Source: Basidiobolus meristosporus CBS 931.73
Taxonomy: Eukaryota; Fungi; Basidiobolomycota
Assembly (NCBI GenBank): GCA_002104905.1
Contig: MCFE01000159.1
Span: 1 to 64,000, forward strand
Length of the DNA stretch: 64,000 nucleotides
Direction of reading: 5' to 3'
In this document: in pieces, positions 3,901-51,700 of the stretch
How the letters are laid out: each line of letters starts with the position of its first letter
Position numbering within the stretch: position 1 is the stretch's first letter
Translations under genes and position numbers: made by a program
The notes under the pieces: model-generated
Seen by the model: only the letters and a program-made list of their open reading frames with translations
Told to the model about the DNA's origin: nothing
The model's database searches: none

Positions 3901-4823
3901 CCTGCCTATCTAAGAAGTTCAAGATGTCTGATCTAGGAGAACTTAGTTACTACTTAGGGATTAAGTTCTCCATAGACAGAAGTACCCAGACTATCACCCT
4001 AAGCCAATCCAAGTATATCCAAGATATAATAAAGAAGTGCCAAATGGAAGACTGTAAACCAACAGCTACCCCAATGGAGACAAACCTTAACTTGGTCAAA
4101 ACTCAACCCAATCAAGAGAGCTTTGTGCCATCTGAAAGCCCTGACTTTCCTTATCAATCTATGGTCGGCAGTCTGATGTATATCATGCTTGGAACATGTC
4201 CAGATATCTCATATTCAGTGGGAGTTGTCAGCCAACATAATCAGAACTATGGATCTCATCATATTGCTGCAGTTAAGCGGATTTTTAGATACCTGAAAGG
4301 AACTGCTGATATCTGCTTAAGATATACTTATAAGGATTCAGAACAGGATCTTGTGAGATACTCTGATGCTGATTGGGGACAAAATTTAGAAGACAGAAGA
4401 TCCACCACAGGATACACCTTTATTTACTGTAAAGGAGCAATATCATGGAATTCAAGAAAGCAACCAACCATAGCACTTTCCACCACAGAGGCAGAGTATA
4501 TGGCAGCCTGTAGAGCTACAAAAGAAGCAATGTGGTTAAGAAAGCTGTTTACAGATTTAGGCCTATGTCAAAAAACACCTATTACTTTATTTCAAGATAA
4601 TCAAGGATGTAAACAATTAGGTAGATATCCAACTTTTCATGCTAGAACCAAGCACATAGATATTAGACATCATTTCATATGTGAAGCTATAGAGAATAAC
4701 TTAGTAAGCTTAGTTTACTGTCCTAAAGATGAAATGATTGCAGACATATTTACCAAACCTTTAGCTAGAGACAAGTTTGAATATCTTAGGTCAAAATTAG
4801 GACTAGTCAGTATGAATATTTAG
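980..4823 (+). pseudogene. copia gag-pol polyprotein with frameshifts and stops
   Basis: Gag EKLDGSNYQVWKVKM; protease WYIDPGASQH; integrase HRRFGH..CEAC, DDYTRY, SDNGGEY; RT QMDVKTAFLNG, LYGLKQSPRAW; RNase H SDADW, TKHIDIRHHF. Spread over several ORF fragments. Confidence 0.95.
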
Positions 4824-34871: not shown

Positions 34872-35585
34872 ATGTTCCGTAGAAAACTGTTTACCATCCC
34901 GCTTTATGCCGCCTCGGCGGTAGGCGTCGGTGCCGTATCTGCCGGCGTATATTATCACCAGAGTGCCCTTAAGAAAGTCGAGGAATTCCCGGGGGTGCCA
35001 TCCTGGAGTTCACTGCGCTCCCTGAAAGGCCCACTGAATAGCAAGACGGCTGAAGAGCAAATCTATCTCGATTCATTCAGTATCCAGGTCCCCCAATCGC
35101 AGCTATCCATCCCTCGTTCAGCCGCCGATAGAGACGCATTGCTGAACAGCTATGCTCGCGCATTTTACACGTCCCCAGTGTTCAAATTGGAAAGGCTTCT
35201 TCTTGGTTGGTTCAAATCCTCCACCCAGACCCCGCCAGAGACGGACAAAGATATCCTCGCCAAGAAATTCCAGGTTGGCGATGTCGTTGCGGTGGAGACC
35301 TACACGGTTGTCAAGCGTGATTCCAACCAGGTGGAGTTCAAGTTTAGCTTACAGAAAGACGTGATTGACGGGACCAGTTGGTTAGCTGTCCAGGAGCCGG
35401 AGACAGAAGACGGGGCCTACACCTTTTGGTTCGGCACGGCCATCTATCCGGCGGCCGAGGAGCTGGCAGAATTCGAAAGTCGATTCAAATCGGATAATTT
35501 CGAAGCCCGTTTCCACAAATTGTACTCCCGTGTATTGATCGATATGGCAGTCAAAAAGCTTGCCTCCATGTATCCATCCGCCTAA
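34872..35585 (+). CDS. hypothetical protein, 237 aa, N-terminal basic presequence plus TM segment (mitochondrial-type)
   Basis: Clean ORF with gene-like composition, AATAAA just after the stop, divergent from GPC1 across 275 bp. Confidence 0.75.
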   Translation: MFRRKLFTIPLYAASAVGVGAVSAGVYYHQSALKKVEEFPGVPSWSSLRSLKGPLNSKTAEEQIYLDSFSIQVPQSQLSIPRSAADRDALLNSYARAFYTSPVFKLERLLLGWFKSSTQTPPETDKDILAKKFQVGDVVAVETYTVVKRDSNQVEFKFSLQKDVIDGTSWLAVQEPETEDGAYTFWFGTAIYPAAEELAEFESRFKSDNFEARFHKLYSRVLIDMAVKKLASMYPSA

Positions 35586-36128
35586 TGCTCAATAAAATCC
35601 ATTCGGCTCGCACCCACATCATAGTTGCTCCTCTCGTGTTTCCCCACCAGTACCATGGGAATATGATGGCAGCGATACATGTGGCCGACCAGATTCAAAG
35701 ATGTGTATATAGGTACATATAGTTAGTAGTGATGTGATATTCCCACCCGAGATACATGAGGCAAGAGTCGGGATCAGTTCGGAGATGATCAACGCCTGAG
35801 AATAAGGATAGTGCCCAGTGCGAATAGATCATGCTTATGGGTTATCCACGCATGCTGTGTTAGTATGAATGTTTATCTGGAATGCACCACACCGCACTAC
35901 ACCAAGCCACCTATCCGCATACTTTGACTAGTGTCTATGGGTTTGTTTGCTCAGGCTGATCATGATGTCAATGGGTGCGTAGCAATCGGATTTTTCCCGC
36001 AACAATATGCATACTGGGGGACCATCTGCATGCAAAGCTCGCATGGAGAGTTGGTTAACAATGCCAAAGAGTGTCTATAAATTAGAGTGTCTCTGGTGCT
36101 ATCCGGCATCCATCCATAACACAACCAA

Positions 36129-36845
36129 ATGAAATCACAAGTAACACTCGCTCTCCTTGCTTTCGCCACTGCGCTCGCTCAAAACAACGGACAAGCCATG
36201 CAAGGTAAGTGTTTCCGGGAAACGCGCTGCGCTTCGGTGGGTTGGTGACAGATTTGCTAAATTTAAACGACAGGTTGCATGTCGAAGTGTGATGAGGAGA
36301 GCTCTACGTGGGTCAACTGTGCCGCAGAGTGTATGGGGGTTCCACATCCCACCACCAGAGATGGTAGGTTCTGTTCTCTTACTGGCCAATTGCGCCGGAT
36401 GCCCTGCAGAAACACTCACTAATGTAATCTCAATCCAACACTCGTGATTGTAGTCCAAGATACTAGAGATTGTTTCAATAATTGTGACCAGAATGATGGC
36501 GGGTGTCAGAGTGAGTGCATTAAAACGCACTTCGTTGGGGATGCTAATGCAAAGAATGATTCTTCTGCCCAGTCGACTAGCACAAGTGGCGCTACTCCTA
36601 CCACCGGTGTGGAGGATCCGGACGCTACTACAACCTCCCTCTCGGTAGCCAGTACCAATAAATCGGTTACGAACACTGCGAACCAGAGTTCGACGGGTTT
36701 ATCCACCAAGCCATCGAGCACAGTGACACCTACTGGAATAAGTAGATCCGCCTCAAATACCCTGTCAAGTGGAACAGCGCTAAACAAGATGATCATAGTT
36801 AGTGCGGGATTACTCCTAAGTGGTCTGATACAAATGCAGTGGTAA
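36129..36845 (+). CDS. secreted 8-Cys, Ser/Thr-rich, GPI-like protein, paralog A
   Basis: Exons 36129-36204, 36274-36363, 36454-36845 with GT-AG introns. MKSQVTLALLAFATALAQ signal peptide; CMSKC..CAAEC..CFNNC..CQSEC; hydrophobic C-terminus. Confidence 0.9.
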
Positions 36846-37316
36846 ATAGTATCGAGAAGGTAACAAGAGAAACAAAGTAGATGTGCCAGAATATACCACT
36901 TTCAAGGAAGAGTAGACAGAAGGATATACTTAGTACCAGAATGAACCTCCCCATTTCTATAGCTAACCCGAAGTGTTGCTTCTACTTCACTGCAGAATCA
37001 AACTCACTGATCTATATATATATACCACCATGTGATACCCATTTTAATTTTTAAACAATGGAGCAAGTAGTAAGCGCTGTTATGGAATTTAGTACAGACA
37101 GCCAACACGACCCATACTCCCAGTGCTGATCACTTTATTTGGAATAAATATGGCACGAGAAATCTGACGTACTCGCCTTCAGATTCAATATCCAAGCCAA
37201 TGTGATGCGCGATGCCACCTTACGGGATCTCCAGGTACACCGAGTTTCTATACAATGGATGAATATCAGGTTAGCTATAAATACAGTTTTCTGGGCATCA
37301 CCAGAAATTCAACACC

Positions 37317-39482
37317 ATGTCTCTAGCTATGTTCAATGAAAAAGGCCATTTCTGTTTTCCCAAGGAAGTAGCCCCTCAGCTCAGCGATGAAGAATGGTCG
37401 ACATTCCGAGTCCTCCTGGACACCTTTACTCCCGGGCTAACTTTAAACCAATGCAAAACTGTAGTCAAGAGCCACCCGCAGCTTCCTAAAGATAAGGCCC
37501 AATGCTTTCTTAGGGCTCCGGTCAGCAGTTGGGTGACTAGGGAGTTTGTGGATTTAAAGCTATCCACCAGGAGTAAAGCAAAGTCAAACAACCTGAAGCA
37601 GACTCTACACTTGTTGAGCTCCTCAACCACCGCATTACCGATGACTGGTCATATCACGCCATTTACAAAACGCTCCTGAGAGCAACGCGAGGTAGCAGTA
37701 CAGAAATGGGCTCTTAGCAGCATTAATACTTTCAAGACCATGTATAATTTATTAGGAGGCCTGTGCATCAATCTTACCTACTCTCAGCCAGCCTTTGGTA
37801 AAGAGTTTATTTATTGGTCAGCCAGTGGTTACCCTGGCCCCGATCCTCTCAGAGACACTAAGAGATTGTCGCTGAGTCTGAACGAGTACCAGTTCTTGGA
37901 AGTCCCCGCTCAAGGGGCCACTCTGGAGTACGACGTGGTGGTTGTGGGAACCGGGGCTGGAGGTGGGGTTGTGGCCGGAAGACTCGCTTCTGCCGGCTTG
38001 AAGGTGCTGGTACTGGAGAAAGGGCAGTTCTACAGCATGGACCAGCTTCCCTTGACCGAGGCTGAGTCCTATCACTATCTGTTTGAGGGCAATGGCTCAG
38101 TAGTCAGTGAGGATGGTGGGCTGACATTACTGGCCGGCTCTACGTTTGGCGGTGGTACGCAGGTAAATTGGTCGGCTTCTCTAGCACCACCCCACTATGT
38201 GAGAGAAGAATGGTCTCGTGAATACGGCCTATCCTTCTTCGAGAGCGCACAATTTCAACGCAATATCGAAGCCGTAAGCAAGAGACTTGGTGTTTCGGAA
38301 GCACATATCCAACACAACTTGGCCAATGAAGCGCTGCTGATTGGAGCCAAGCGACTTGGATATCCTACTGGCAACATTCCTCAGAACACAGCCAATAGAC
38401 ATCATGATTGTGGCTGGTGCACGTTTGGCTGCTCGAACGGGGGCAAACAGAGCACGACGGTAACGTGGCTACAAGATGCTCAGCAGCATGGAGCTCACTT
38501 TGCGGTGAACTGCCAGGTGAAGCAAGTGATAATCAAGGACGGAAGGGCCGAAGGAGTCATTGCGCATGTGAATGGATCCCCTCTTGTGGTCAAAGCCAAG
38601 CGAGTAGTGGTTTCAGCAGGTGCACTGAACAGCCCTTTGATCCTTGAGCGATCCGGACTCAGGAACAAGAATATCGGACGTCATCTGCGTGTTCATCCCG
38701 TGTACATAGCCAGCGGTTACTTCCCCGATATCACGATTGACCAGTTTAGTGGAAGTATCATGACTGCGATCACAGGTGTTGCCGACCGTCGAAAAGGCAC
38801 CGGGTACGGAACAAAGATTGAGATCCTCGCAGGGCATCCAGTTCTGGGATGCTTCTTGAGATCTTGGAGGTCTGGGTAGAGCCACAAAATAAGCATGCTG
38901 ACATTGAGGAACCAAATAACTGTGGCCATTTTGATCCGAGACAAAGATAACGTGGCCCGGGTGTTTGCCGACAAAGAAGCACAAAAGCCGTGTGTCGAGT
39001 TTTCCCTGGGCAAGTTCGATGCAGAATCGGGGGTAGAAGGTGTTCAGGCGGCCACTAAGATCTTGGTTGCTCTTGGAGCCCAGGAGGTGGAGGTCCCGTT
39101 CCCTGGGATGAAGCCATTTGTTGCTGAGTATACAGAGGTCCCATCGGGAGATGATTCCGTTTTCCCCAACGTTGAGCTCAAGGATTCTGCGAAATTGGCC
39201 CAATTCCTCGACAAGATGAGTCGTACCAATTTCAAACAGCTGTCACCCATGTCAGCTACTGCTCATATCATGGGCTCATGTCGCATGGGAACCTCGCCTA
39301 AGGTATCGGTTGTGAATCCCAAGGGTGAGACATGGGAAACAAAAGGACTATATGTCGCGGATGCAAGTGTGTTCCCAACGTCAAGTGGGGTCAATCCCAT
39401 GATCACCATACAATCGGTTGCGTACTCGATTGCTGAGTTCATTAAGGAAGATTTATTTCAATCTCATGAGTCCAAGCTCTAA
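37317..39482 (+). pseudogene. long-chain fatty alcohol oxidase (GMC oxidoreductase) copy 1, two in-frame stops
   Basis: Collinear with 39817-41982 without indels. TGA at 37677-37679 (TCA in copy 2) and TAG at 38877-38879 (GAG in copy 2). Confidence 0.9.
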
Positions 39483-39816
39483 TTGATGGCTGATTTACCA
39501 CTCTACTCGAGATGAGAAGCTGAGGCTTATGATCCAATATATATAAATTGCCTTTATGAATCATACGTATATATACCGATTATGTCCATTAAACCAACCA
39601 CCTATTGACCATCCTGATCAATCCAGTCAAAGCACCATCGTCAGCCAACTCATGTTTCATTTACCGCACGACCATGATACAGCCTTAGATAAGCTGATAT
39701 ACTTTCCTATGGTTTTGGGACGGGCTATTGAGGTGCGGGGATCTATGCCGTTTACGATTGATTTTTGGTGATCACTATAAATTGAAGGATTCCCATCAAA
39801 GTCAGAGATATTCGCC

Positions 39817-41982
39817 ATGGCTTTGGTCACTTATGATGAGAAAGGCAGATTCGCATTTCCAAGTGAAGTCACCCCCCTGTTGACCGATGAAGAGTGGTCA
39901 ACATTCCAAGTCCTTCTGGACACTTTCACTCCAGAATTAACTATGAAGCAGTGCGACAGGATACTTGAGAACCACCCGCAATTTCGTAACGATAACGCTC
40001 AACGCTTCCTCAGGACCCCAGCCAGTATTTGGGTTACCCGGCAGTATGCGGACCTGAAACTATCCAGCTTGAGTAAACAGAAAGTGAAGGATTTAAAAAA
40101 TATCCTGCACTATCTGAACTCCTCGGCTGCCTCGCTGTTTCTAACCGGCCATATTTCGCCATTTACGAAGCTCTCCTCAGAGCAACGTGAGCTGACCATC
40201 CAAAAATGGGCCGTCAGCAGCCTTGGAACTTTTCGAACTCTGTATAATACGTTGGGGTGTCTGTGCATCAATCTTACCTACTCTCAGCCAGCCTTTGGTA
40301 AAGAGTTTATTTATTGGTCAGCCAGTGGTTACCCTGGCCCCGATCCTCTCAGAGACACTAAGAGATTGTCGCTGAGTCTGAACGAGTACCAGTTCTTGGA
40401 AGTCCCCGCTCAAGGGGCCACTCTGGAGTACGACGTGGTGGTTGTGGGAACCGGGGCTGGAGGTGGGGTTGTGGCCGGAAGACTCGCTTCTGCCGGCTTG
40501 AAGGTGCTGGTACTGGAGAAAGGGCAGTTCTACAGCATGGACCAGCTCCCCTTGACCGAGGCTGAGTCCTATCACTATCTGTTTGAGGGCAATGGCTCAG
40601 TAGTCAGTGAGGATGGTGGGCTGACATTACTGGCCGGCTCTACGTTTGGCGGTGGTACGCAGGTAAATTGGTCGGCTTCTCTAGCACCACCCCACTATGT
40701 GAGAGAAGAATGGTCTCGTGAATACGGCCTATCCTTCTTCGAGAGCGCACAATTTCAACGCAATATCGAAGCCGTAAGCAAGAGACTTGGTGTTTCGGAA
40801 GCACATATCCAACACAACTTGGCCAATGAAGCGCTGCTGATTGGAGCCAAGCGACTTGGATATCCTACTGGCAACATTCCTCAGAACACAGCCAATAGAC
40901 ATCATGATTGTGGCTGGTGCACGTTTGGCTGCTCGAACGGGGGCAAACAGAGCACGACGGTAACGTGGCTACAAGATGCTCAGCAGCATGGAGCCCACTT
41001 TGCGGTGAACTGCCAGGTGAAGCAAGTGATAATCAAGGACGGAAGGGCCGAAGGAGTCATTGCGCATGTGAATGGATCCCCTCTTGTGGTCAAAGCCAAG
41101 CGAGTAGTGGTTTCAGCAGGTGCACTGAACAGCCCTTTGATCCTTGAGCGATCCGGACTCAGGAACAAGAATATCGGACGTCATCTGCGTGTTCATCCCG
41201 TGTACATAGCCAGCGGTTACTTCCCCGATATCACGATTGACCAGTTTAGTGGAAGTATCATGACTGCGATCACAGGTGTTGCCGACCGTCGAAAAGGCAC
41301 CGGGTATGGAGCCAAGCTTGAGATCCCCACAGGGCATCCAGTCCTGGGATGCTTCCTGAAATCCTGGAGGTCTGGGGAGAGCCACAAGACGAACATGTTG
41401 ACATTGCGAAACCAAGTCTCGGTGATCACACTGATCCGGGATAAGGATAGCGTGGCCCGAGTGTTTGCCGACAAAGAAACACAAAAGCCGTGTGTCGAGT
41501 TTTCCCTGGGCAAGTTCGACGCGGAGTCCGGAGTAGATGGTATCGAGGCAGTAGTGAAAATTCTGATCGCTGCTGGGGCCAAGAAAGTGGAGGTCCCGTT
41601 CCCTGGGATGAAGCCATTTGTTGCTGAGCATACAGAGGTCCCATCGGGAGATGATTCCGTTTTCCCCAACGTTGAGCTCAAGGATCCTGCGAAATTGACC
41701 CAATTCCTTGATGAGATACGTCGCACGAAGGCTAAGCAGCTATCCCCTATGGTTGGCTCTGCTCATCAAATGGGCACTTGTCGCATGGGAACCTCGTCTA
41801 AGGTATCGGTTGTGAATCCCAAGGGTGAGACATGGGAAACAAAAGGACTATATGTCGCGGATGCAAGCGTATTCCCTACACCAAGTGGGGTCAATCCCAT
41901 GATCACCATACAATCGGTTGCGTACTCGATTGCTGAATTCATCAAAGAGGACGTATTCCATATCAAAGGCTCCAAGCTCTAA
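39817..41982 (+). CDS. long-chain fatty alcohol oxidase/dehydrogenase (GMC family), 721 aa, intronless
   Basis: VVVGTGAGGGV FAD motif, LAGSTFGGGTQVNW, CGWCTFGC, SAHQMGTCRMG, GVNPMIT; N-terminal extension typical of FAO. Confidence 0.95.
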   Translation: MALVTYDEKGRFAFPSEVTPLLTDEEWSTFQVLLDTFTPELTMKQCDRILENHPQFRNDNAQRFLRTPASIWVTRQYADLKLSSLSKQKVKDLKNILHYLNSSAASLFLTGHISPFTKLSSEQRELTIQKWAVSSLGTFRTLYNTLGCLCINLTYSQPAFGKEFIYWSASGYPGPDPLRDTKRLSLSLNEYQFLEVPAQGATLEYDVVVVGTGAGGGVVAGRLASAGLKVLVLEKGQFYSMDQLPLTEAESYHYLFEGNGSVVSEDGGLTLLAGSTFGGGTQVNWSASLAPPHYVREEWSREYGLSFFESAQFQRNIEAVSKRLGVSEAHIQHNLANEALLIGAKRLGYPTGNIPQNTANRHHDCGWCTFGCSNGGKQSTTVTWLQDAQQHGAHFAVNCQVKQVIIKDGRAEGVIAHVNGSPLVVKAKRVVVSAGALNSPLILERSGLRNKNIGRHLRVHPVYIASGYFPDITIDQFSGSIMTAITGVADRRKGTGYGAKLEIPTGHPVLGCFLKSWRSGESHKTNMLTLRNQVSVITLIRDKDSVARVFADKETQKPCVEFSLGKFDAESGVDGIEAVVKILIAAGAKKVEVPFPGMKPFVAEHTEVPSGDDSVFPNVELKDPAKLTQFLDEIRRTKAKQLSPMVGSAHQMGTCRMGTSSKVSVVNPKGETWETKGLYVADASVFPTPSGVNPMITIQSVAYSIAEFIKEDVFHIKGSKL

Positions 41983-42674
41983 CTAATTTATTTATGCCCC
42001 CAACTGTACCCCCCCCCCCTGAACTAACTAAATACTCGCCGATACATAGTCAATGAATAGTAAATTGTGTTTATACTGAAGGGGAAACGCCAAGAATGTG
42101 ACCTGAAAAGATGGGTATCGAGGGTTTTCAGCAAGGCTAATCGTAAGCTAAGGTTTTTGGTGCTCATCCAGCATATATTTTCCAGAATAGTTAGAGATTC
42201 TGAGCAACCAAAGCTGAAGCAGTGAGGTGATTTGGTGATCTTACTATTACCCACCACATTTGGTAGTAAATAGAGTCCGCAACAGTAACAACATGGGCTC
42301 GGTGGTCCCCCACATATGATGACAGTGTTTGACGAGGGTACATCATATATATGCAGTCTCAAACTTCAAGCAGTAAGGCTACAATCTAGAAACAAGCCCA
42401 ACTAGTTGTATGTTGCCCCCTCAAAGACCGACTTGGTATGCTTCGAAAAAGACCCCAACCCGTGCCGCATGCCTATTGATGTAGAGCTAACGATGGATCA
42501 ACTAAGCACATAGTTCGTATAATTTAACAAGCCAATGCACAAAGCAACACTGTAAACCATAGCATGTATCGGTCCGACGAATCCTTAGCTCGTGCTATAT
42601 AAACTTTAGGACTAGTGAATGAACATCACCAAGGAACTCGAGTTCACAGGAATACTTCTATTGAAAAGTTCAAT

Positions 42675-43368
42675 ATGAAAAGTTGTCTTATCATTGTTTC
42701 GGTCGTTCTCTCCTCCGTTGTGGCTCAGGCAAATGGGAAAGCTGTTCAAGGTATGTGGATTGGGGGTGGACGAAGATGCTTCGGTATCATCCTTGGTTGC
42801 TCACCAGAATCAAATACTAGGATGTATCTTAATGTGTGATCAGGGAAGCCCAACATGGGTCAGCTGTGCTGCGGAGTGTATGAGAGCTCCACACCCTACC
42901 ACCAGAGATGGTGAGCGCTATTCATCTACACTTGCCCATTGTGGTAGGTAATTTGCTGGAGCACCTACTCATTAACCCTTCAATCCGACTCGCATGATTG
43001 CAGTGCAAGATACCAAAGACTGCTTCAATGAGTGTGATCAGAATGATGGAGGGTGTCAGAGTGACTGTATCAAGACACATTTTGTTGGCGGAGAAAATTC
43101 AATGAGCAAATCCACTGTTCAGCCGACCGACACAAATATTCCTACTTCTAAAAGTACCGAAGATTCTGTAGCTACCAACACCTCGCTCTCTACTAGCATC
43201 TCTAGCCAAAGTATGACTAGCGGAGCCACTAGGGCTTCGAATCCACCAACAACCACTGGACCAAGTCGGTCAGCCTCAGTCAATATATCAAGCGGAGAGA
43301 CAAGGAATCAGGTGGCTATGGTAACCACAGGATTACTATTAAGTGGCCTATTGTGGATGCAACATTAG
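42675..43368 (+). CDS. secreted 8-Cys GPI-like protein, paralog B
   Basis: Exons 42675-42750, 42821-42910, 43004-43368; CILMC..CAAEC..CFNEC..CQSDC; ends GLLLSGLLWMQH. Confidence 0.9.
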
Positions 43369-43663
43369 ACAAGCATGGAGAAAAGATCGACGTTCTAAAA
43401 TAGTTCAGCTTTGAAAATGCAGAATATATACCAATAAACACATATCTTTCTTCATGCACAACAGTGTAGGAATACATGGTAAAGGTGTCAAAATGGAGCA
43501 TTGCTTATAGAATATGCATAGTCTGCTCAGTTTTCGTGTCTATCTCTGGCATATCCAGAGCTCAGATTACGTGAAATTCCTACTACACCCCGTGCTTGGG
43601 CACCCCACCCCAAGCTTAAGGTGCTACTTACATAATCGGTGCAGCACTCCATCCCTCGTATCT

Positions 43664-43882
43664 GTGATAATTCCCCTCGCTTGGCATTGTGGCATCAACT
43701 GCGGTGAGTGTGGAGATTCACACCTCAACTTGTTGGTTCCCGCCTCCTGTTTCTACCTTCAGTCTGGCTCCACCGCTGCTACCGAATATAAACCCCAAGG
43801 GGACTCAATTCAATCACCATCACGACAGCAACAATACTGCTCCTGCTACTTTACCAAGACTCTCCGTACATCCTAACCCAAG
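43664..43882 (+). promoter_or_regulatory. conserved promoter/5' leader of paralog C, inverted copy at 46439-46667 upstream of paralog D
   Basis: Shared blocks GTGATAATTCCCCTCGCTTG, GAGTGTGGAGATTCACACC, CAGTCTGGCTCCACCG, TATAAA and CCAAGGGGACTCA. Confidence 0.75.
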
Positions 43883-44793
43883 ATGAGATCTGCCTTGATA
43901 ATTGCCCTTATTTCCCTCTCAATGGTAGCTTCCCAAAACGACGATCAAGATATGCAAGGTAAATAATTAGGAGGATACATGCCCGGTGCTAAATGGGTTA
44001 CTGAGGATGACTTGAATCCTAGGATGTTTGTCTCTTTGTGACCAGGACAGTCCACAATGGGTGGTCTGTGCAGCCGACTGTGTTGGTGTATCCCATCCGA
44101 TAATGGAAGATGGTAATTGAAAGATTTCCATTAATTGATGGCGATACTTACTGTTGTCTACCTACAGTGCAAGACACGCAGGACTGCGTTGATGGATGCG
44201 ATTCTGACGATGGCCAATGCCACAATCAATGCATCAAGGCTCATTTCGACCGGCACGTATCCCAGACCGAGCTCGTCGACACCACTTTTGGGGAAGAGAG
44301 TAATGATGGTTTCCCAGTTCCTGATAATACCCCAGTCCAAACTCCAGAGCCCAGAGCAAGCGCCAGTAATCACCCCTCCAGCCAACCCACTGGTCATGCA
44401 AATGGAGACACATTCTCGGGTGAGAATGCTGGGATGACTATGCCACTCCCGGCTGCTGGGAATGGGAACTCAAGATCCGACCACAACAGCAATGGCAACA
44501 ACCATCGGCTCAACCCAGCTGGAAATCCTGTTGGTGGACCAGCCTCCGGATTATCGAACACCCATACCTCAGCAGTAGCCAGAGGCACCATCCCAAGCAC
44601 TCTCGCTGGGAGAATTATGAACAAGGGCGTAGCTTCACATAGCACTCCTACATCATCCGCATTTGTTGGCGTAAGTCGCACCTCTACCAGAGTTGTATCC
44701 ACTTCCATCCTACCTGGTAGTCAATCATCCAGCATTAGGGTCACCTCAGCTCTGCTGGTATCAGGAATTTTGGTCACCTTGAGCCAACATTAG
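43883..44793 (+). CDS. secreted 8-Cys GPI-like protein, paralog C
   Basis: Exons 43883-43958, 44023-44112, 44168-44793; CLSLC..CAADC..CVDGC..CHNQC; long S/T/N/G/P tail. Confidence 0.9.
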
Positions 44794-45663
44794 TGAGGAA
44801 TCGCATATAGTCATATCAATAAATGCATTCATTACCGGAAATACCACCACATTAACTACGGCATCATCTATGGCATCAAGCGTGCTAGCAGTTTCTGAGA
44901 CAGTACAGTACTTGTATCAGCATGATGAGCGACTCCTTCCAACAAGATGGGCGTTGGTTTTAGCAATTCCGGCATTCCCTAAGCAAATCAGCCCAATCGA
45001 GTATACGAATCTTCGGCAGAGCTCTTTTTAAAGATCTGAAAATTGGCTTCAAGATACTGGCTTATAGTGCAAGTGCTGTATTTAAGGTTAGGAAATGGGT
45101 TAGGCTGTGGGGCCATACTCATTGTAACAGTCCTTGGTATCTGCACGACAACCATGTGAGTTGGATTGTAGGGTTGGTGAGTGGGCGAATGGATACTTCT
45201 GCAGAATACCCAGGACGCATAGCGTAGGCGAATGATATCCAACACCTTTTCACTGTTAGGTATAGAACTTCCATACACACTCCACGACTCAGCTGACTCG
45301 CCCGAGGCCTTCCCAGTTGCATACTGAGAAGCAGTCAAGTGCTTGAATCCCACGAGTACCCAGCAGCTCTTCCTATCGAACGCAATCGGTATCCAACTAA
45401 TCGACAACACGGAAAACAAGTGAAGAATAAAATACAGTCAAGGAGCCTTTTGATAAGGAATATCTTCGGTAATTCCATGGCAAACTTTATTGACTATATT
45501 CAGGACAGGAAGATGAGCTGCTTCGAAGAAGGTCTGGCTCTAACTAGCGACTCAAGTGACAAATGTGGCAGTTATGCATGAATGGAAGTCATGTCCCCCC
45601 CTAAGGATTTCTGGAGATATGTGATATATGCAACGCAAAAGGATTCTCATCTTGATGTATCCG

Positions 45664-46438
45664 TTAAAGGTTCCAACAGTATAGCGCGGCGGTAGCCAAA
45701 ATCCCTACATTGAATGAGGCCTTGCTTTCGGATGCGTCGTTCATTTGTGGCACGAAGGCAATCGGCGTGCGTGCAACTCTGGCTGAAGTCACGCTCGGGG
45801 AACTTGTAGTGAATGAGTTCATACTATGACTTAGTCTGGACATGACAGACTGGCCAGTAGGCATACTTGTATGTGTAGTCAGTTGTGTGCCACGATGTGT
45901 GGCCAGATGCGAGGGTGGATTTGTGGCTAGATGCGAGGATGGGGTTGTGGCTGGGTGTGTGGCTTGTTCCGGAGCGATAGATTGCGTAGTGGAAAATGGA
46001 CCCTCCTCACTAGGATCTGCATTGCTAGTTGCGATTGAGTTACTACTTTCACCGGTAACATTTTCCGAATGACTCTCTTGGCACCAACTAGGGCAGCTGC
46101 CCCCATCGTTGCATTCGTTTGCACATTCCATCCATTCATGATCTAGGTCTAGTGTGTCGAGGCATAGTTAGTCGTGAGAGAATAGACGACCAGGAAACCA
46201 TGAGGACAAACCATCGTCGATCTCAGTAGGAGGTAATCCAACGCAATCAGATGCACAGTTAACCCATTCGGGATCATCTTGATCGCACTGTGCTAGGCAA
46301 TCTACGATTCATGGGTTAGCCATATCAGTTCCACAGTTCTCTTCGTATACACAGCCTCTTACTTTGGATTTCGTGATGATCCTCCTGGGCTGCAACGAGT
46401 ATGAAGGAAATCAGGGGAAGAATCAAAGTCAGTCTCAT
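45664..46438 (-). CDS. secreted 8-Cys GPI-like protein, paralog D
   Basis: Exons 46438-46363, 46301-46212, 46142-45664; MRLTLILPLISFILVAAQ; CLAQC..CASDC..CANEC..CPSWC; T/H/P repeat tail. Confidence 0.88.
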
Positions 46439-46999
46439 CTTAGGTAAGTCAATTGGTTTGAAGAGCCTTGGTGAAGAAGCAGTAGTAGCTATGGTTGTTG
46501 CAGTTGTGATGATGATTGAGCCGTGAGTCCCCTTGGCATTTATACTTGGCAGCAACGGTGGAGCCAGACTGGAGGTGGAAACAGGAGACGGAAATCAACA
46601 AGCTGGGGTGTGAATCTCCACACTCGCCCCGGTTGATCCCACAATGTCAAGCGAGGGGAATTATCACGTATGTGGGGGACGGTGAGCAATCCCGCTTATG
46701 TAGAGATACCACCTTTCCTGAGCACGAGCTGCGATGGATGACGGAGTCAAAACAAATACGCCGGGACCCATCTAACATGCGAACGGAAGAGGATGCGCCA
46801 GGCCTTCACATGCATGCATACTTGTGGGCGTGTGTTAATAACAACACTTGAAGCATCAAGAATTGCATCATCCACTCAACCATATTAATACAAATTTATT
46901 GCTACAGTATGTTCATCGGTACACTAAGAAATCAACGGTATCATGAAACAAAACGCTGTACAGATTTACAATCAGCTAGCCCTCCCCTGGCCTTCTAAT

Positions 47000-47619
47000 C
47001 TATTTCTGAACCCAAATCAGGCCACACATAAGCATCCCTACACTAAACAATGTCGCATCTGTCATGCTTGCTCCACTGGATGGTGTGACCGAGGGTGGTC
47101 TATTGGAACTAGATGCAGTGGTGGCAGCAGAGGCACCTGTGGCCATTGTGCCGCCTGCTCGGCCTGCAGTTTTGGTTGCCGAACCAAGCATGCCAGTCGG
47201 AGTTGCTGATCCAGAGCCCAAAGGTTGGTGGGATTGTGATCCATCGCCGCTAACGAAGTGGGTTTTGATACAGTTATCCTGACAGCCACCATCGTTCTTT
47301 TCGCACTGGTTAAAGCAATCTTTCGTGTCCTGGACTACATGTGGGTTAGATGAGTATGGACGGAACTTTTCTGGTCATAGCCATGCCACATACCATCCTT
47401 GTTGGTTGGGTGCGGTACACCCACACATTCCGCCGCGCAAGTGACCCATAAAGCGCTACTCTGATCGCACTTTGCCAAGCACTCTTCGGAAAGGTTTGGT
47501 TAAACTGCATAAGTAACGACCGATCGGATCGGGAGACCCTTACCTTTTGCCGGCATGGAGGTATTCTGCGCCAATACAGAGGACATCGCGACAAGCCCAC
47601 AGACAACGAGGAATTTCAT
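47000..47619 (-). CDS. secreted 8-Cys GPI-like protein, paralog E
   Basis: Exons 47619-47544, 47483-47394, 47334-47000; MKFLVVCGLVAMSSVLAQ; CLAKC..CAAEC..CFNQC..CQDNC; ends GMLMCGLIWVQK. Confidence 0.9.
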
Positions 47620-48798
47620 GATATTTTTCAAGGCAGAGAATCTACAACTGTTGGATCGGTTGGACGAGGTGAGGAACTTATATAGGCGCTGGTCCCAGGA
47701 ATGGTTGGTTTGATGACGATGCACCTCAAACGCGTGCGCAACACCCATCAACAAAACAAAAACACCCATGGTGGTTGGGGACATACATGAGGCCGGATGG
47801 TACGGCGCCTTTGCATTAGTGGATGGTAGAGATGTGTAGTCGGTTAATGACCTCCGATCCCATTGTTCCAGCCGTTAAATTAAAAATCATTTGCACTAGG
47901 GGCAGTGGGTGTTGGCCTTCTCTCCTCTCTGGCGTAGAGATGTCTTTATCCTACCGAGTACAGCACCACAGCTACCGGGTTGGTAATGCCTGGCAACAAT
48001 CTCATTACGAGATTGTGCAGCAGCCAACTACCATTTGGATTTGGTGCAATGGCAGGTCCGCTAGCTGTCACCTGATCAGTACTACTTGACACCAGAATCG
48101 ATCACGCCAACACTAAGCTTACAAGGAGAAGGTGGGGCAAGGAGACCCTCGAAAACAAACCTGTCGATTCACGGACCTTCCTTTCCCTCACACACACTAA
48201 AGCCTGCGTCGCACTCCACTTCCTCACTGGAGATAGGTTGACCAGAAGCTATTGAGGAGCAACTGCATGCAAAAAACCTTGATACGACGTACGAGAACCA
48301 TTGCTTCGGCCGGACCCTTAGTATCATTAAGACTAGGTTACCTCTATTCAATCCTGCCCGCCAGCGACGCTCTACCGACGTCTCACCTAGAGACCTGTGG
48401 AACGAAGATTGGACTGGAGACCCCCTCCTCTCAACCCGTTGATCGCACATGTTTACCGAGCAGACCTACGGGATTCCCTGAGGTACTGATAAACAAAGAC
48501 TTCCCGTAACCAAGGGAATTTCCGAATCAGGCAATCGACACACAACCATGTTTGGTCAATGTTGAAGTCACTTTATCCACCAAGCTCTACTCAATAATAA
48601 AATTGCCCATTCGATACCGTGGGAATTAGGGATACAACTATAACTGAGGCCGAGGCTGGAAAAATACGGGGCATCGGGGTTTAATCGCGGTAGGAAGCGC
48701 TACAGGTTACACTGAAATGAACAGTAGTGGACTAGTGCTTGGATTATTAGGTTGAGGCGGGGAGAAGGAAGCAAAATTAAAATGGATCATAAACTAGA

Positions 48799-51700
48799 CT
48801 ATACTACATCTGAAAGTGCGAGGTCAGCTTTCCCCTCGGTGCTGGTGTTGGTCGGTGGTTGCAACCGTGTCGGCATTCGCAGCTGGAATATGTATTGATG
48901 GTGACTCTGGAAGGGCTCCATGACACAGTAAATCCCGGTCTTGTTTCTGCCATTGTTCAGGCATCTCAGCCCGGTGGTCTCTATCACCTGCTCCAGCGCC
49001 CCGGTTTCGACATTTCGGATCTCGATGAAGGACGGGCTGAATCCAATCAAGTATGGATAGTGGAAGGCGAGGTTTGTCGGCTGGCCCTCCCATTCCATGA
49101 AGAACTCGGGTCTCGAACGATGCCCAGCATTATCGATGTAGAACACAAATTCGTCATAGCATAGCAGCAGCTCCTCCGTCCCGATCCGATACATGGCCAA
49201 CGGCTTGTAGTGCTCATACTTCACGAAGAAGGTGAATTGCCGCTCGTTCTTGGGGTCGGGGATGGCTTTGTGTGCCTCCTTCTCCAGATCAAGAACCTCG
49301 AATCCCTTGCTGGACACGAGATACAACTTCTTCTTTAGGAAGCATATCGAGTTGGAATCGGTCGAGATGCAAAGCTGCTTGTTCAACTTCAGGGCATAGC
49401 CGTTTTTCTGGCAGAGCAACTTCGGCTTCCCCTTGACTTGGCTGACCTTGACTGGCTCCAGGATTTTGCAAAACGACTTCAGCCCCTTGAGCTTCATGAC
49501 TGCAACGTACTTTTGGTCGTTCAGTGTGCCTGCACAGAAATAGGTGACATGCGAAGCAAGCTTTTGTCCGTGGCGATTCACGAATCTCTTGGGGTTGTCC
49601 AGCAAGTCGATGCTATAGCAGATCAGTAACCTGTCCTGCAACACGAGCATCATCTCAAACTCCTCCAGAATCTCGATGTGCCGGATCTTTTCCAGGCTCA
49701 GCACTTTACTAAAGCTGGTAGAATTCCCTTCGATACCGACATACACTCCATCATCTGCACCAATCACGATCTTGCGCGATTTGTTGGAGGCGGTGTAGTG
49801 TGTGGAGCAAGTGATCCTACACACAAGGCCGAACGTAGAATCTGAGATGGTGATGATATCAAACGCATGGGGTCTTTCCATCATCCTGCGGGCACGCTGA
49901 TCCTGTATTCTATTGATCCACTGCTTGCGCTCAGCTGGAGACGTGGCCAGCAAGGTGTAAGTCGACCCGCGTTTACTGATGTGGGTGAAGCAGAAGGGAA
50001 ACCCTAGTTTGGCAGAATCAGGCACGGCGGGTGAAACCGAATCAGGCACATTGAAGGTGAACAACTCCAGCGGGATTGGCTGAAAAAAGAGAGTCGGTTA
50101 GACAAAGGCATCGACAACAAATCGCGCGAACACTCACCCTTCCATAAACCCGGTAGAGTACGGTGCCGTTAGAGCGCTTTTTTTCCTTGGTGAGCAGGAA
50201 AACATGGTCAAAAAGGAACACGCGCAGAGAATGGCCCGTAGGTCGCTTGAACTCGCCTTCGCGGATTAGCTTACGGCTCGGGTCATTCAGTTGGAGATCC
50301 TGCATCAAATCGTAGGGTTAATCATTCGGAAGCCGTCTAAGACTGCCATGCAAGCCTACCTGATATTCGCCCGGCTTAAATACGATTTGGTCCATCAGAT
50401 CGTGAATGCGAATGACGGAATTGCGCTGCCCCGTCTCCTCGTTGATCTTCCTCAGAATTTCCCGAATCCCGTCCAAAGCCTTTCTCAGGACCTCCTTGTC
50501 CGGATTCGTGTCGGGGGTGTATTTGAGAATGCTTTCGAATAGGAGGTTGTATCTTCCCAGACGGGTGGTGGGCCGGCTCATGAAGCTCTTCAGATCGAGC
50601 TTCCTTGTTTCTGGGTTTCTCTCCTGTTCCTATTTGTCGTCGCAGCATATTAGAGTCGATCCTGATAGGGGTGATGTGTGAGTGCTACTCACTTGCAGGT
50701 ATTTGCCCAAGCTCGGGTTCTTTTTCAACTCCTTGTCCAGAACCCGCTGTGCAACCACCAAATTAGAGCCATATTCCAGATAAGCTTCCAGCGCTTTGAC
50801 CTCGCATAAATAAATATCCCCAATCTCTTGAACGACTGGATTCTGGTTCTGTCTAGCAACCAAGGCCTCGACAATTCTACTGTGCACCACCTCCAACTCC
50901 TTAAGGTTGGCAAAAAGATCATGGAGAAACGCGTCCACTCGCTCTTTCTCTATGATCTCCTTTTCTTTCAGCGGGGTCACGAATACCTAGGAATAGACGT
51001 CAATAGGCATTCCAGCGAGTAGATGCTGCATTTCAGCTACCTTCTCGATCAACCTCAGGTCAGCCAGGTACTCCTCCTCAGTGTAGATGGTTTCGAATAT
51101 GATCTCCTGTCGCTTGATATCTTTTTCCGTCATGGTCTGTGTAACTTCTGGCGGGACCGTATTTACCCAACATCTCAGCTACTTTACATCAGTGACATGC
51201 ACATTCATCGCATAGTAAGCAAACAACATACCTTATCCCCTATCATCTCAGCACTCCTTCTGGACGGCTCTTTTTGTTGGTCTTGGTCTTGGTCTTTGAT
51301 CAGTGAATTGTGGCTCGTGTTTTTGGAATCGATGTCCAGGTCATCTGACAGTATCGATTCTTCCGAGATAGTGGAAACCTCATTTTGTTCGTTGTGGATC
51401 TCTTCCAATTGGAAGATTGTGCTGTCAGCGTGAAGGCTGGACATTCCATCAAGCTCCTTAAGCTCTTTATCACAGAATGAGGTGGATAAGCTAAACTCGT
51501 CGCTTGACAGATCGGACATCACCAAGGTTTCATCTAAACTGCTGGATTGTTTGGTGCATTCAGCCGAACTCGTATCAGAATCAGACCCCTTCTTGATGTC
51601 AGGCTCCTTTACACTTTCCGTGGGCGTTGACACCGCTGGCTGGACAGGTGAGCTCTCTGCTGATTCAAGAATTTCCTTAATCTTACTTAAGGCGGGCTGC

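What the first reader, a model, noticed from the sequence alone, without database searches (positions are those of the whole stretch)
36129..47619. Hidden five-gene array of secreted twin-CX3C-hairpin, GPI-like surface proteins wrapped around a fatty alcohol oxidase pair
Seen in sequence: five paralogs (A 36129+, B 42675+, C 43883+, D 46438-, E 47619-) are invisible as whole proteins in the ORF track. All have exon 1 of exactly 76 nt and exon 2 of exactly 90 nt with two phase-1 introns. They share a signal peptide, then C-x3-C-x9-C-x3-C-x16-C-x3-C-x5/6-C-x3-C with conserved W-V-x-C-A and (H)P, then a Ser/Thr-rich stalk that differs greatly in length and sequence, then a GPI-signal-like hydrophobic end. 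Established: this Cys spacing is neither the hydrophobin pattern (no CC pairs) nor CFEM. It resembles two tandem alpha-hairpinin-type CX3C-Xn-CX3C motifs. Inference: a diversified cell-surface adhesin/effector family physically clustered with long-chain alcohol oxidases, possibly a module for attaching to and using waxy or cuticular surfaces. It sits only about 4 kb from a transposon-rich block.
Basis: partly seen in the sequence, partly recalled or inferred. Interest (0 to 1): 0.78.

Follow-up and report, generated by a model that had tools for sequence, protein, structure and literature searches.

The report
Basidiobolus double-hairpin cysteine surface protein array
Five neighbouring three-exon genes of the fungus Basidiobolus meristosporus encode small exported, probably lipid-anchored surface proteins whose head is an eight-cysteine domain found only in this genus, and they sit beside a fatty-alcohol oxidase gene in two species; what they do is untested.

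Summary
Five paralogs (A-E) have exon 1 of 76 nt, exon 2 of 90 nt and two phase-1 GT-AG introns. Each encodes a 17-residue signal peptide, an eight-Cys head, a Ser/Thr-rich stalk and a GPI-signal-like tail. The Cys spacing is 3-9-3-16-3-6-3; gene D has 18 and 5, not 16 and 6. Synonymous sites are saturated while the heads stay conserved, so these are old, selected genes.

"Hidden" is only partly true. The window is Basidiobolus meristosporus CBS 931.73. D is public model K493DRAFT_301033, identical to my model. E is K493DRAFT_301034, with a wrong N-terminal extension. A is swallowed by a chimeric public model.

A profile search of 1.84 billion proteins found relatives only in B. meristosporus and B. 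ranarum. Pfam (including CFEM), PDB sequence and fold searches and the ESM Atlas gave nothing. AlphaFold predicts four helices, that is two helical hairpins.

Linkage to the long-chain alcohol oxidase (FAO) recurs: adjacent locus tags in B. ranarum, and a second contig in B. meristosporus. But FAO ends in -SKL (peroxisomal), and one of the two FAO copies here carries two premature stops.

Verdict: a genus-restricted new head domain on the familiar fungal GPI wall-protein layout. A functional tie to FAO is unproven. This scan had not reported this family before.

The parts
36129..36845 (+). Gene A, 185 aa: signal peptide, eight-Cys head, Ser/Thr stalk, GPI-like tail
   Evidence: Exons 36129-36204, 36274-36363, 36454-36845. 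Has no public model of its own: 23 aa of its stalk are built into the chimeric model P0013. Closest relative is K493DRAFT_298704 on another contig, 79% identical in the head.
37317..39482 (+). FAO1, a long-chain alcohol oxidase copy with two in-frame premature stops (probable young pseudogene)
   Evidence: Colinear with FAO2 over 721 codons with no indels. TGA at 37677-37679 (Ser in FAO2) and TAG at 38877-38879 (Glu in FAO2). GMC_oxred_N and GMC_oxred_C domains. Central tract of about 1.05 kb nearly identical to FAO2.
39817..41982 (+). FAO2, intact long-chain alcohol oxidase, 721 aa, ends in -SKL
   Evidence: GMC oxidoreductase domains, E 1e-58 and 8e-23. Homologues are named long-chain-alcohol oxidase; the B. 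ranarum orthologue is 73% identical. The public model P0011 starts at residue 43 of the ORF.
42675..43368 (+). Gene B, 176 aa, same architecture
   Evidence: Exons 42675-42750, 42821-42910, 43004-43368. Clade with A and K493DRAFT_298704, support 95/92.
43883..44793 (+). Gene C, 263 aa, same head with a long Ser/Thr-poorer stalk
   Evidence: Exons 43883-43958, 44023-44112, 44168-44793. Groups with B. ranarum K7432_017780, support 91/92.
45664..46438 (-). Gene D, 216 aa, the most divergent head (spacing 3-9-3-18-3-5-3)
   Evidence: Exons 46438-46363, 46301-46212, 46148-45664. Identical to public protein K493DRAFT_301033 / ORX96187.1. Groups with B. ranarum K7432_008355, support 86/88.
47000..47619 (-). 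Gene E, 166 aa, same architecture
   Evidence: Exons 47619-47544, 47483-47394, 47334-47000. Contained in public protein K493DRAFT_301034, which adds 50 upstream residues. Orthologue is B. ranarum K7432_008354, support 99/97.
43629..43882 (+). Upstream region of gene C, one arm of an inverted repeat shared with gene D's upstream region
   Evidence: Arms 43629-43807 and 46524-46702 are 83% complementary. The alignment is about 85-90% identical over about 230 nt up to the ATG and includes a TATAAA box.
46439..46702 (-). Upstream region of gene D, the other arm of that inverted repeat
   Evidence: Upstream identity between C and D is 0.79, against 0.56-0.61 for every other pair.

Best explanation
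The five genes are a tandemly duplicated family, known only from the genus Basidiobolus, of small surface glycoproteins.

Shown: the conserved three-exon structure; the 17-residue signal peptide with a small-x-small cleavage motif before an invariant Gln; the eight-Cys head under purifying selection; the fast-evolving Ser/Thr-rich stalk; and orthologues of the C, D and E lineages in B. ranarum, so the array predates the split of the two species.

Inferred: the protein enters the secretory pathway. The head folds into four short helices arranged as two helix-loop-helix hairpins. Each hairpin is stapled by two disulfides between its paired CX3C motifs, and exon 2 encodes exactly the first hairpin. 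The stalk is heavily O-glycosylated. The C-terminal hydrophobic tail is exchanged for a GPI anchor, so the acidic head (pI 4.1-6.1) is displayed above the plasma membrane or wall on a mucin-like spacer.

Most likely role, and the least certain step: a binding or contact head (ligand, cation or surface) rather than an enzyme, with paralogs differing mainly in stalk length. The adjacency to a peroxisomal long-chain alcohol oxidase is inherited microsynteny within the genus. Whether it reflects co-regulation is open.
For: Gene models and Cys spacing. Only five copies in the window. pN 0.07-0.41 against saturated pS. Public models agree with the splice junctions. The exon-2 profile search of 1.84e9 representative proteins gave 8 true hits, all from B. 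meristosporus or B. ranarum, plus one repeat-driven false positive (a VERL protein). All 12 members keep C-x3-C-x9-C-x3-C-x14-18-C-x3-C-x5-6-C-x3-C. AlphaFold with the family alignment gives helices 22-29, 38-46, 53-64 and 71-83 (P0002), and 38-46, 55-67, 74-87 with the first helix merged with the signal helix (gene D). Head pLDDT is about 60-90; the stalk is disordered; the C-terminus is helical. In both models each CX3C lies at the helix ends flanking a loop. Tree with cross-species pairs. D/E adjacency is conserved (K7432_008354/008355 on one 13.8-kb contig). FAO linkage. Acidic heads. TATA-like boxes 53-106 nt upstream of all five ATGs.
Against: No transcript, proteomic or anchor data were available here. 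No SignalP or GPI predictor could be run, so the signal peptide and the omega-site region were judged by rule of thumb only. The structure models rest on nine sequences, with mean pLDDT 53-55 overall, and I could not inspect Cys-Cys distances, so the disulfide pairing is inferred from the motif. Nothing shows what the head binds. A very short type I membrane anchor cannot be excluded.
Confidence: 0.6

Rival explanations
1. The first reader's module: the surface proteins and the alcohol oxidase work together. The family attaches the fungus to waxy or cuticular material or captures long-chain lipids, and FAO oxidises the alcohols taken up. The clustering would then reflect co-regulation.
For: FAO-family adjacency recurs. 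In B. ranarum K7432_007774 (family) and K7432_007775 (FAO, 73% identical) have consecutive tags on one 14,992-nt contig. In B. meristosporus K493DRAFT_298704 (A-like) and a third FAO (83% identical) both lie on a 181,022-nt contig. Basidiobolus is associated with insects and animal guts (general knowledge).
Against: All FAO copies end in -SKL, so they are peroxisomal and not at the surface. FAO1 here has two premature stops. The second B. meristosporus locus looks like a segmental duplicate (A 79% and FAO 83% identical to the window copies), so it is not independent evidence. The B. ranarum pairs 008354/008355 and 008249/008250 share no recorded contig with an FAO. Only A and B flank FAO; C, D and E simply follow. 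Microsynteny between congeners is expected by descent. There are no expression data.
Confidence: 0.15
2. The head is a very divergent CFEM domain, so these are haem- or iron-handling GPI proteins like Candida Rbt5/Pga7. That would push CFEM back before the Ascomycota-Basidiomycota ancestor.
For: The overall layout is the same: signal peptide, eight-Cys helical head, Ser/Thr stalk, GPI signal. The first spacings (C-x3-C-x9-C) fall inside the CFEM consensus quoted in PMC4530338. UniRef automatically names the B. ranarum C-orthologue 'Extracellular membrane protein CFEM domain-containing protein'.
Against: Pfam CFEM (PF05730) gives no hit at E up to 10 for any of seven full-length members, including the one so named. 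No member fits the strict or the loosened CFEM Cys pattern, and none has the C-x-C pair. The family profile finds no CFEM structure by sequence, and two models find none among the listed fold matches. Only one of nine public members carries the name, and another carries an equally automatic '4Fe-4S ferredoxin-type' name. CFEM was reported absent from zygomycete genomes (PMC4530338).
Confidence: 0.1
3. The heads are fungal counterparts of plant alpha-hairpinin defence peptides: tethered or proteolytically released antimicrobial or protease-inhibiting hairpins.
For: Each half fits the alpha-hairpinin motif C-X3-C-X4-20-C-X3-C (PMC11591084). The predicted helix-loop-helix of hairpin 2 superposes on vicilin-buried peptides and nigellin (6o3q Z 3.0, rmsd 4.1, 40 aligned; 6wqj Z 2.8, rmsd 2.2, 33 aligned; 2nb2 Z 2.7, rmsd 2.5, 33 aligned). 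The best, non-significant, PDB sequence hit of the hairpin-2 profile is EcAMP1 (E 0.095).
Against: Those Z scores tie with dozens of unrelated helical hairpins. The EcAMP1 alignment is out of register and covers only the CX3C motifs. The heads are acidic, pI 4.1-6.1, unlike the mostly basic plant peptides (general knowledge). They carry a stalk and an anchor signal rather than being free peptides. The motif is known to be widespread and non-specific (PMC11591084).
Confidence: 0.05
4. The C-terminal hydrophobic stretch is a true transmembrane anchor, giving a type I membrane protein with almost no cytoplasmic tail, and not a GPI signal.
For: No GPI predictor was run. The tails are predicted helical.
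Against: The hydrophobic stretch is only about 13-18 residues and ends 0-4 residues from the C-terminus. It is preceded by small residues (S/G/A/N/D) and a short polar spacer in all 12 members, which is the usual GPI-signal layout.
Confidence: 0.1

Closest known systems
CFEM-domain GPI proteins of Ascomycota and Basidiomycota (Pfam PF05730; e.g. Candida Rbt5/Pga7/Csa2)
   Same: A fungal protein with a signal peptide, a roughly 60-residue helical head with eight cysteines, a Ser/Thr-rich stalk and a GPI signal. Such genes often occur in tandem arrays. The first two Cys spacings (3, 9) lie within the CFEM ranges.
   Different: The rest of the Cys pattern differs and there is no C-x-C pair. There is no Pfam hit, no sequence hit to CFEM structures and no CFEM among the listed fold matches. 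The family is confined to Basidiobolus, a lineage where CFEM was reported absent.
Plant alpha-hairpinins (EcAMP1, vicilin-buried peptides, nigellin)
   Same: The C-X3-C-Xn-C-X3-C motif and a predicted helix-loop-helix presumably held by two disulfides. Here there are two such units in tandem.
   Different: No detectable sequence homology. The heads are acidic rather than basic. The units are part of an anchored glycoprotein rather than free peptides. They are fungal, not plant. The structural similarity is no better than to any helical hairpin.
Twin-CX3C small Tim proteins of the mitochondrial intermembrane space (Tim9/Tim10 family)
   Same: Paired CX3C motifs on two antiparallel helices. A TIM22-complex chain appears among the weak Foldseek rows (E 6.8).
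   Different: Small Tims have one hairpin, no signal peptide, no stalk and no anchor, and act inside mitochondria. The match is not significant.
Class I/II hydrophobins
   Same: Small secreted fungal proteins with eight cysteines.
   Different: Hydrophobins need two adjacent CC pairs and a beta-barrel core. No member here has a CC pair, and the head is predicted to be all-helical.
Long-chain alcohol oxidase (FAO; GMC oxidoreductase family). This applies to the two enzyme genes inside the array.
   Same: FAO2 has GMC_oxred_N and GMC_oxred_C domains and the roughly 200-residue N-terminal extension. It is 35-44% identical to proteins named long-chain-alcohol oxidase across fungi, oomycetes and plants.
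   Different: Nothing unusual in FAO2. FAO1 carries two premature stops.

Membership tests
CFEM (PF05730 / IPR008427) | Significant match to the Pfam CFEM profile | tested here: not met
   hmmscan of seven full-length members at E up to 10 gave no CFEM row. The exon pieces also gave none.
CFEM (PF05730 / IPR008427) | Eight-Cys consensus PxC[A/G]x2Cx8-12Cx1-3[x/T]Dx2-5CxCx9-14Cx3-4Cx15-16C (PMC4530338) | tested here: not met
   Strict and loosened regular expressions fail in all 12 members, and none has C-x-C. Only the first two spacings agree.
CFEM (PF05730 / IPR008427) | Helical-basket fold as in solved CFEM proteins | tested here: inconclusive
   No CFEM entry appears in Foldseek PDB or in two VIA-align wide searches. 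But the models are of moderate confidence and such searches can miss small domains.
CFEM (PF05730 / IPR008427) | Match to the PROSITE CFEM profile (the likely source of the UniRef name of P0004) | not testable with these tools
   No PROSITE library is on hand. Only the automatic name was seen.
Alpha-hairpinins | Cys motif C-X3-C-X4-20-C-X3-C (PMC11591084) | tested here: met
   Met twice per protein: hairpin 1 with X9, hairpin 2 with X5-6. The source paper warns that the motif is not specific.
Alpha-hairpinins | Helix-loop-helix stabilised by two disulfides | tested here: inconclusive
   AlphaFold predicts helix-loop-helix for both halves. Disulfide geometry could not be inspected. Structural matches reach only Z 2.7-3.0, tied with unrelated hairpins.
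Alpha-hairpinins | Sequence relationship to known members; a short free plant defence peptide | tested here: not met
   EcAMP1 scores only E 0.095 and is out of register. The heads are acidic and are part of anchored glycoproteins of a fungus.
Hydrophobins | Eight Cys with two CC pairs | tested here: not met
   No CC pair in any member. No Pfam hydrophobin hit.
Fungal GPI-anchored wall or membrane glycoproteins (an architectural class, not a homology family) | N-terminal signal peptide | tested here: met
   M-K/R, then a hydrophobic core of Kyte-Doolittle score 1.9-2.8, then a small-x-small motif before an invariant Gln at +1 in all members. Rule-based only; SignalP was not available.
Fungal GPI-anchored wall or membrane glycoproteins (an architectural class, not a homology family) | C-terminal GPI signal: small omega-region residues, polar spacer, terminal hydrophobic stretch | tested here: inconclusive
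   The layout is present in all 12 members. No GPI predictor and no biochemical data.
Fungal GPI-anchored wall or membrane glycoproteins (an architectural class, not a homology family) | Ser/Thr-rich, presumably O-glycosylated spacer | tested here: met
   Stalks are 51-160 aa with 21-48% Ser+Thr and are predicted disordered. Glycosylation itself was not tested.
Long-chain alcohol oxidase (for FAO2) | GMC oxidoreductase N and C domains plus full-length similarity to named FAOs | tested here: met
   PF00732 E 1e-58 and PF05199 E 8e-23. 640 homologues at E <= 1e-50, many named long-chain-alcohol oxidase. Enzyme activity was not tested.

The most novel reading that the evidence does not exclude
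The head is a previously undescribed fungal domain: two disulfide-stapled alpha-hairpins, possibly born by duplication of one hairpin, with exon 2 as a symmetric phase-1 module. It would have evolved independently of plant alpha-hairpinins and of CFEM. Displayed on a GPI-anchored mucin stalk, it would serve as the surface-capture part of a conserved lipid-use locus together with the peroxisomal alcohol oxidase.
Probability: 0.12. Interest if true: 0.65.

Novelty: new variant of a known kind. Interest (0 to 1): 0.42.

Why it matters
Basidiobolus is an early-diverging fungus and an occasional human and animal pathogen, and its cell surface is almost unstudied. A genus-specific, selected, multi-copy surface protein family is a reasonable candidate for contact with its substrates or hosts, and it could serve as a genus marker or antigen. 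It also gives a compact, apparently new cysteine-stapled helical domain whose structure could be solved. If a link to CFEM were ever shown, it would move the origin of that domain earlier than published. The practical gain now is better annotation: gene A is missing as a model of its own, gene E has a wrong start, and FAO1 is fused into a chimera.

Tried and rejected
- Word-index search with exon 3 of A (residues 1-40) was blank. It is uninformative, because public model P0001 shares several 5-mers with the query and was still not returned.
- Exact look-up of the FAO2 ORF and the upstream ORF was blank, because the public models differ in their starts.
I therefore could not fetch the B. ranarum contigs or the second B. 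meristosporus contig. Adjacency there rests on consecutive locus tags and equal contig lengths.

**Searches that found nothing**
- Pfam on exon pieces and on full-length public models: no family.
- PDB sequence searches with the exon-2, exon-3 and full-family profiles: nothing significant.
- Foldseek PDB: best E 5.3. VIA-align wide on both models: best Z 4.0 and 3.5, generic helical hairpins.
- ESM Atlas: no usable feature hits, only weak structural neighbours.
- JGI metagenome scan with the family alignment: 93 pattern matches, none confirmed.
- Literature: no paper joins Basidiobolus with CFEM, and none treats this family.

**Readings rejected**
- Hydrophobin, CFEM membership, and a pseudogene or chance-ORF reading for A-E.

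- The spliced models of A, B and C have no reference, so they were not sent to any search, family scan or fold.
- Searches used exon-wise references, and public protein ids for D, E and the relatives.
- Exons were joined only inside local scripts, to check frames, Cys spacing, dN/dS, the alignment and the tree.
- For the same reason I could not look up whether B and C exist as public models.

Full report
**What is there**

The region lies in the gene-rich, 45-50% GC part of the window. It sits to the right of a low-GC (about 39-41%) block that carries copia-type and gypsy-type retrotransposon fragments.

It found one consistent model per gene:
- A: 36129-36204 / 36274-36363 / 36454-36845, plus strand, 185 aa
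- B: 42675-42750 / 42821-42910 / 43004-43368, plus strand, 176 aa
- C: 43883-43958 / 44023-44112 / 44168-44793, plus strand, 263 aa
- D: 46438-46363 / 46301-46212 / 46148-45664, minus strand, 216 aa
- E: 47619-47544 / 47483-47394 / 47334-47000, minus strand, 166 aa

All ten introns are GT..AG, phase 1 and 55-93 nt long.

Every product has these parts:
- A 17-residue signal peptide ending in a small-x-small motif before an invariant Gln.
- An eight-Cys head. The spacing is 3-9-3-16-3-6-3 in A, B, C and E, and 3-9-3-18-3-5-3 in D.
- The invariant W-V-x-C-A motif.
- A stalk of 51-148 residues with 25-48% Ser+Thr.
- A terminal hydrophobic stretch preceded by small residues and a short polar spacer.

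**Is it more than chance?**

tblastn of the signal, exon-2 and exon-3 pieces against the whole window hits only these five loci (E 1e-13 to 1e-25). Nothing elsewhere is better than 0.02.

Between paralogs, the proportion of synonymous differences (pS) is saturated at 0.6-1.0. The proportion of nonsynonymous differences (pN) in the head is 0.07-0.41. Introns and flanks are at background identity. These are therefore old duplicates kept by purifying selection on the head, while the stalks are only 15-47% identical.

TATA-like boxes lie 53-106 nt upstream of each ATG.

**How the searches were run**

The spliced models have no reference. Exons were joined only inside local scripts, for frames, spacing, dN/dS, the alignment and the tree.

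Exon pieces gave no Pfam family. A leave-one-out test showed that exon 2 (hairpin 1) is the better-conserved half: 44-69 bits against 11-69 bits for the exon-3 half. I therefore used the five-sequence exon-2 alignment A1 for the single exhaustive HMMER search.

**Relatives and the public annotation**

Among 1.84 billion representative proteins, nine scored E <= 0.001. One is a repeat-driven false positive, an abalone VERL-type protein. The other eight are from Basidiobolus meristosporus CBS 931.73 or B. ranarum. A ninth true relative, P0010 of B. ranarum, came only from the later word-index search with alignment A4.

What these hits show:
- P0005 (K493DRAFT_301033) is identical to my model D.
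- P0001 (K493DRAFT_301034) contains model E entire, behind a 50-residue extension. That extension begins upstream of the TATA-like box.
- Two of the five genes are therefore already public models, with the same splice junctions.
- Gene A is not a model of its own. The 930-aa public model K493DRAFT_407314 fuses the upstream 237-aa gene, 23 residues of A's stalk, and FAO1.
- Whether B and C are public models could not be looked up without typing joined sequence.

The family also has a member on another B. meristosporus contig (K493DRAFT_298704, A-like) and at least six in B. ranarum. A metagenome scan found none.

**Evolution of the array**

A maximum-likelihood tree of the N-terminal 115 residues gives these groups:
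- E with B. ranarum K7432_008354 (support 99/97)
- C with K7432_017780 (91/92)
- D with K7432_008355 (86/88)
- A, K493DRAFT_298704 and B in one clade (95/92)

The C, D and E lineages thus predate the split of the two species. The E and D orthologues are still neighbours in B. ranarum: consecutive locus tags on one 13,803-nt contig.

C and D are convergent genes, yet they share about 230 nt of upstream sequence at 83-90% identity although their coding synonymous sites are saturated. This points to promoter conversion or to strong constraint on the promoter.

Profiles of hairpin 1 and hairpin 2 align weakly on a shared C-x3-C-D-Q motif (hhalign probability 42%). That hints that the head arose by duplication of one hairpin.

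**What the head is**

Full-length public members give no Pfam family at E up to 10. No member fits the hydrophobin pattern or the published CFEM pattern.

AlphaFold with the nine- or eight-sequence family alignment predicts four helices in the head. In P0002 they are 22-29, 38-46, 53-64 and 71-83. Head pLDDT is roughly 60-90, the stalk is disordered, and the C-terminus is helical. In both models each CX3C lies at the helix ends flanking a loop. This is the geometry expected for hairpins stapled C1-C4/C2-C3, but I could not inspect the coordinates.

No structural or sequence search placed the head in a known family:
- Foldseek against the PDB found nothing (best E 5.3).
- Two VIA-align wide searches gave only generic helical hairpins (best Z 4.0 and 3.5).
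- Plant alpha-hairpinins appear among these rows for hairpin 2 (6o3q Z 3.0, rmsd 4.1, 40 aligned; 6wqj Z 2.8, rmsd 2.2, 33 aligned; 2nb2 Z 2.7, rmsd 2.5, 33 aligned). They are tied with many unrelated chains.
- PDB sequence searches gave nothing. EcAMP1 scored E 0.095, out of register.
- The ESM Atlas gave no feature hits. Its only structural neighbours were weak: an unnamed Ascomycota cluster of 184-aa proteins and DUF7707 proteins.

One lead points to CFEM. UniRef automatically names the B. ranarum C-orthologue a CFEM-domain protein, while D carries an equally automatic "4Fe-4S ferredoxin-type" name. Given the negative Pfam, motif and fold tests, I treat CFEM as a low-probability rival, not as membership. 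CFEM was also reported absent from zygomycetes (PMC4530338).

The heads are acidic (pI 4.1-6.1). That speaks against a cationic antimicrobial role.

**The alcohol oxidases**

FAO2 (39817-41982) is an intact 721-aa GMC oxidoreductase with hundreds of homologues named long-chain-alcohol oxidase.

FAO1 (37317-39482) is colinear with FAO2, codon for codon. It has TGA at 37677-37679, where FAO2 has Ser, and TAG at 38877-38879, where FAO2 has Glu. A central tract of about 1.05 kb is almost identical to FAO2, which indicates gene conversion. So the "pair" is one gene plus a probable young pseudogene, unless these are assembly errors.

All Basidiobolus FAO copies end in -SKL, the classical peroxisomal signal.

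Linkage with the eight-Cys family recurs:
- In B. ranarum, K7432_007774 (family, P0010) and K7432_007775 (FAO, 73% identical) are consecutive on a 14,992-nt contig.
- In B. meristosporus, K493DRAFT_298704 and a third FAO (83% identical) both lie on a 181,022-nt contig.

But conservation between congeners, and in what looks like a segmental duplicate, is expected by descent. It does not show function.

**Verdict**

The sequence observation is confirmed, with small corrections: D's spacing, the public models of D and E, and the broken FAO1.

The best reading is a Basidiobolus-restricted family of secreted, probably GPI-anchored, mucin-stalked surface proteins. They carry a new eight-Cys double-hairpin head on the familiar fungal wall-protein layout.

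Noticed in passing
window 37317-39482: FAO1 is colinear with FAO2 (721 codons, no indels) but carries in-frame TGA at 37677-37679 and TAG at 38877-38879. A central tract of about 1.05 kb is almost identical to FAO2, so gene conversion is acting on a copy that is otherwise decaying, or the stops are assembly errors.
   Followed up: partly
window 34872-39482: Public gene model K493DRAFT_407314 (930 aa) is a chimera. It fuses the 237-aa upstream gene, 23 residues of gene A's stalk, and FAO1 with invented introns that skip the two stops. As a result gene A has no model of its own.
   Followed up: yes
window 47620-47769 (minus strand): The public model of gene E (K493DRAFT_301034) starts 50 codons upstream of the signal-peptide ATG. 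A TATA-like box at -65 lies inside that extension, so the public start is probably wrong and hides the signal peptide.
   Followed up: partly
window 43629-43882 and 46439-46702: The promoters of the convergent genes C and D form an inverted repeat of about 180-230 nt at 83-90% identity, although the coding sequences are saturated at synonymous sites. This suggests promoter-only conversion or a strongly constrained shared regulatory element. No other pair shares it.
   Followed up: partly
window 1-32000: Low-GC (37-42%) block with retrotransposon remains: copia-type gag-pre-integrase and RVT_2 at 1809-4823, and a gypsy-type protease-RT-RNaseH-integrase at 19447-22299. The GC content rises at about 32 kb where the genes begin.
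   Followed up: partly
exon 2 versus the start of exon 3 of all five genes (alignments A1, A2): The profiles of hairpin 1 and hairpin 2 align on C-x3-C-D-Q...C-x3-C (hhalign probability 42%, E 2.6e-4). The head may have arisen by duplication of a single hairpin, and exon 2 is a symmetric phase 1-1 exon encoding exactly one hairpin.
   Followed up: partly
P0002 and P0004 (B. ranarum relatives): The ESM Atlas structural neighbours include an unnamed Ascomycota cluster of 184-aa proteins (TM 0.46-0.51 over 41-47 residues) and DUF7707 (PF24808) proteins of 185 aa. Their size is similar to this family. Possible distant analogues, not followed up.
   Followed up: no
window 48799-50064 (minus strand): The ORF just downstream of the array encodes CNH and PH domains (CNH E 8e-55). 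The same gene probably continues upstream (minus-strand ORFs to about 52.8 kb). It appears unrelated to the array.
   Followed up: no
(tool behaviour): The word-index protein search with exon 3 of A returned no candidate, although public protein P0001 is within the length range and shares at least five 5-mers with the query region. A blank from that tool was therefore not taken as evidence of absence.
   Followed up: yes
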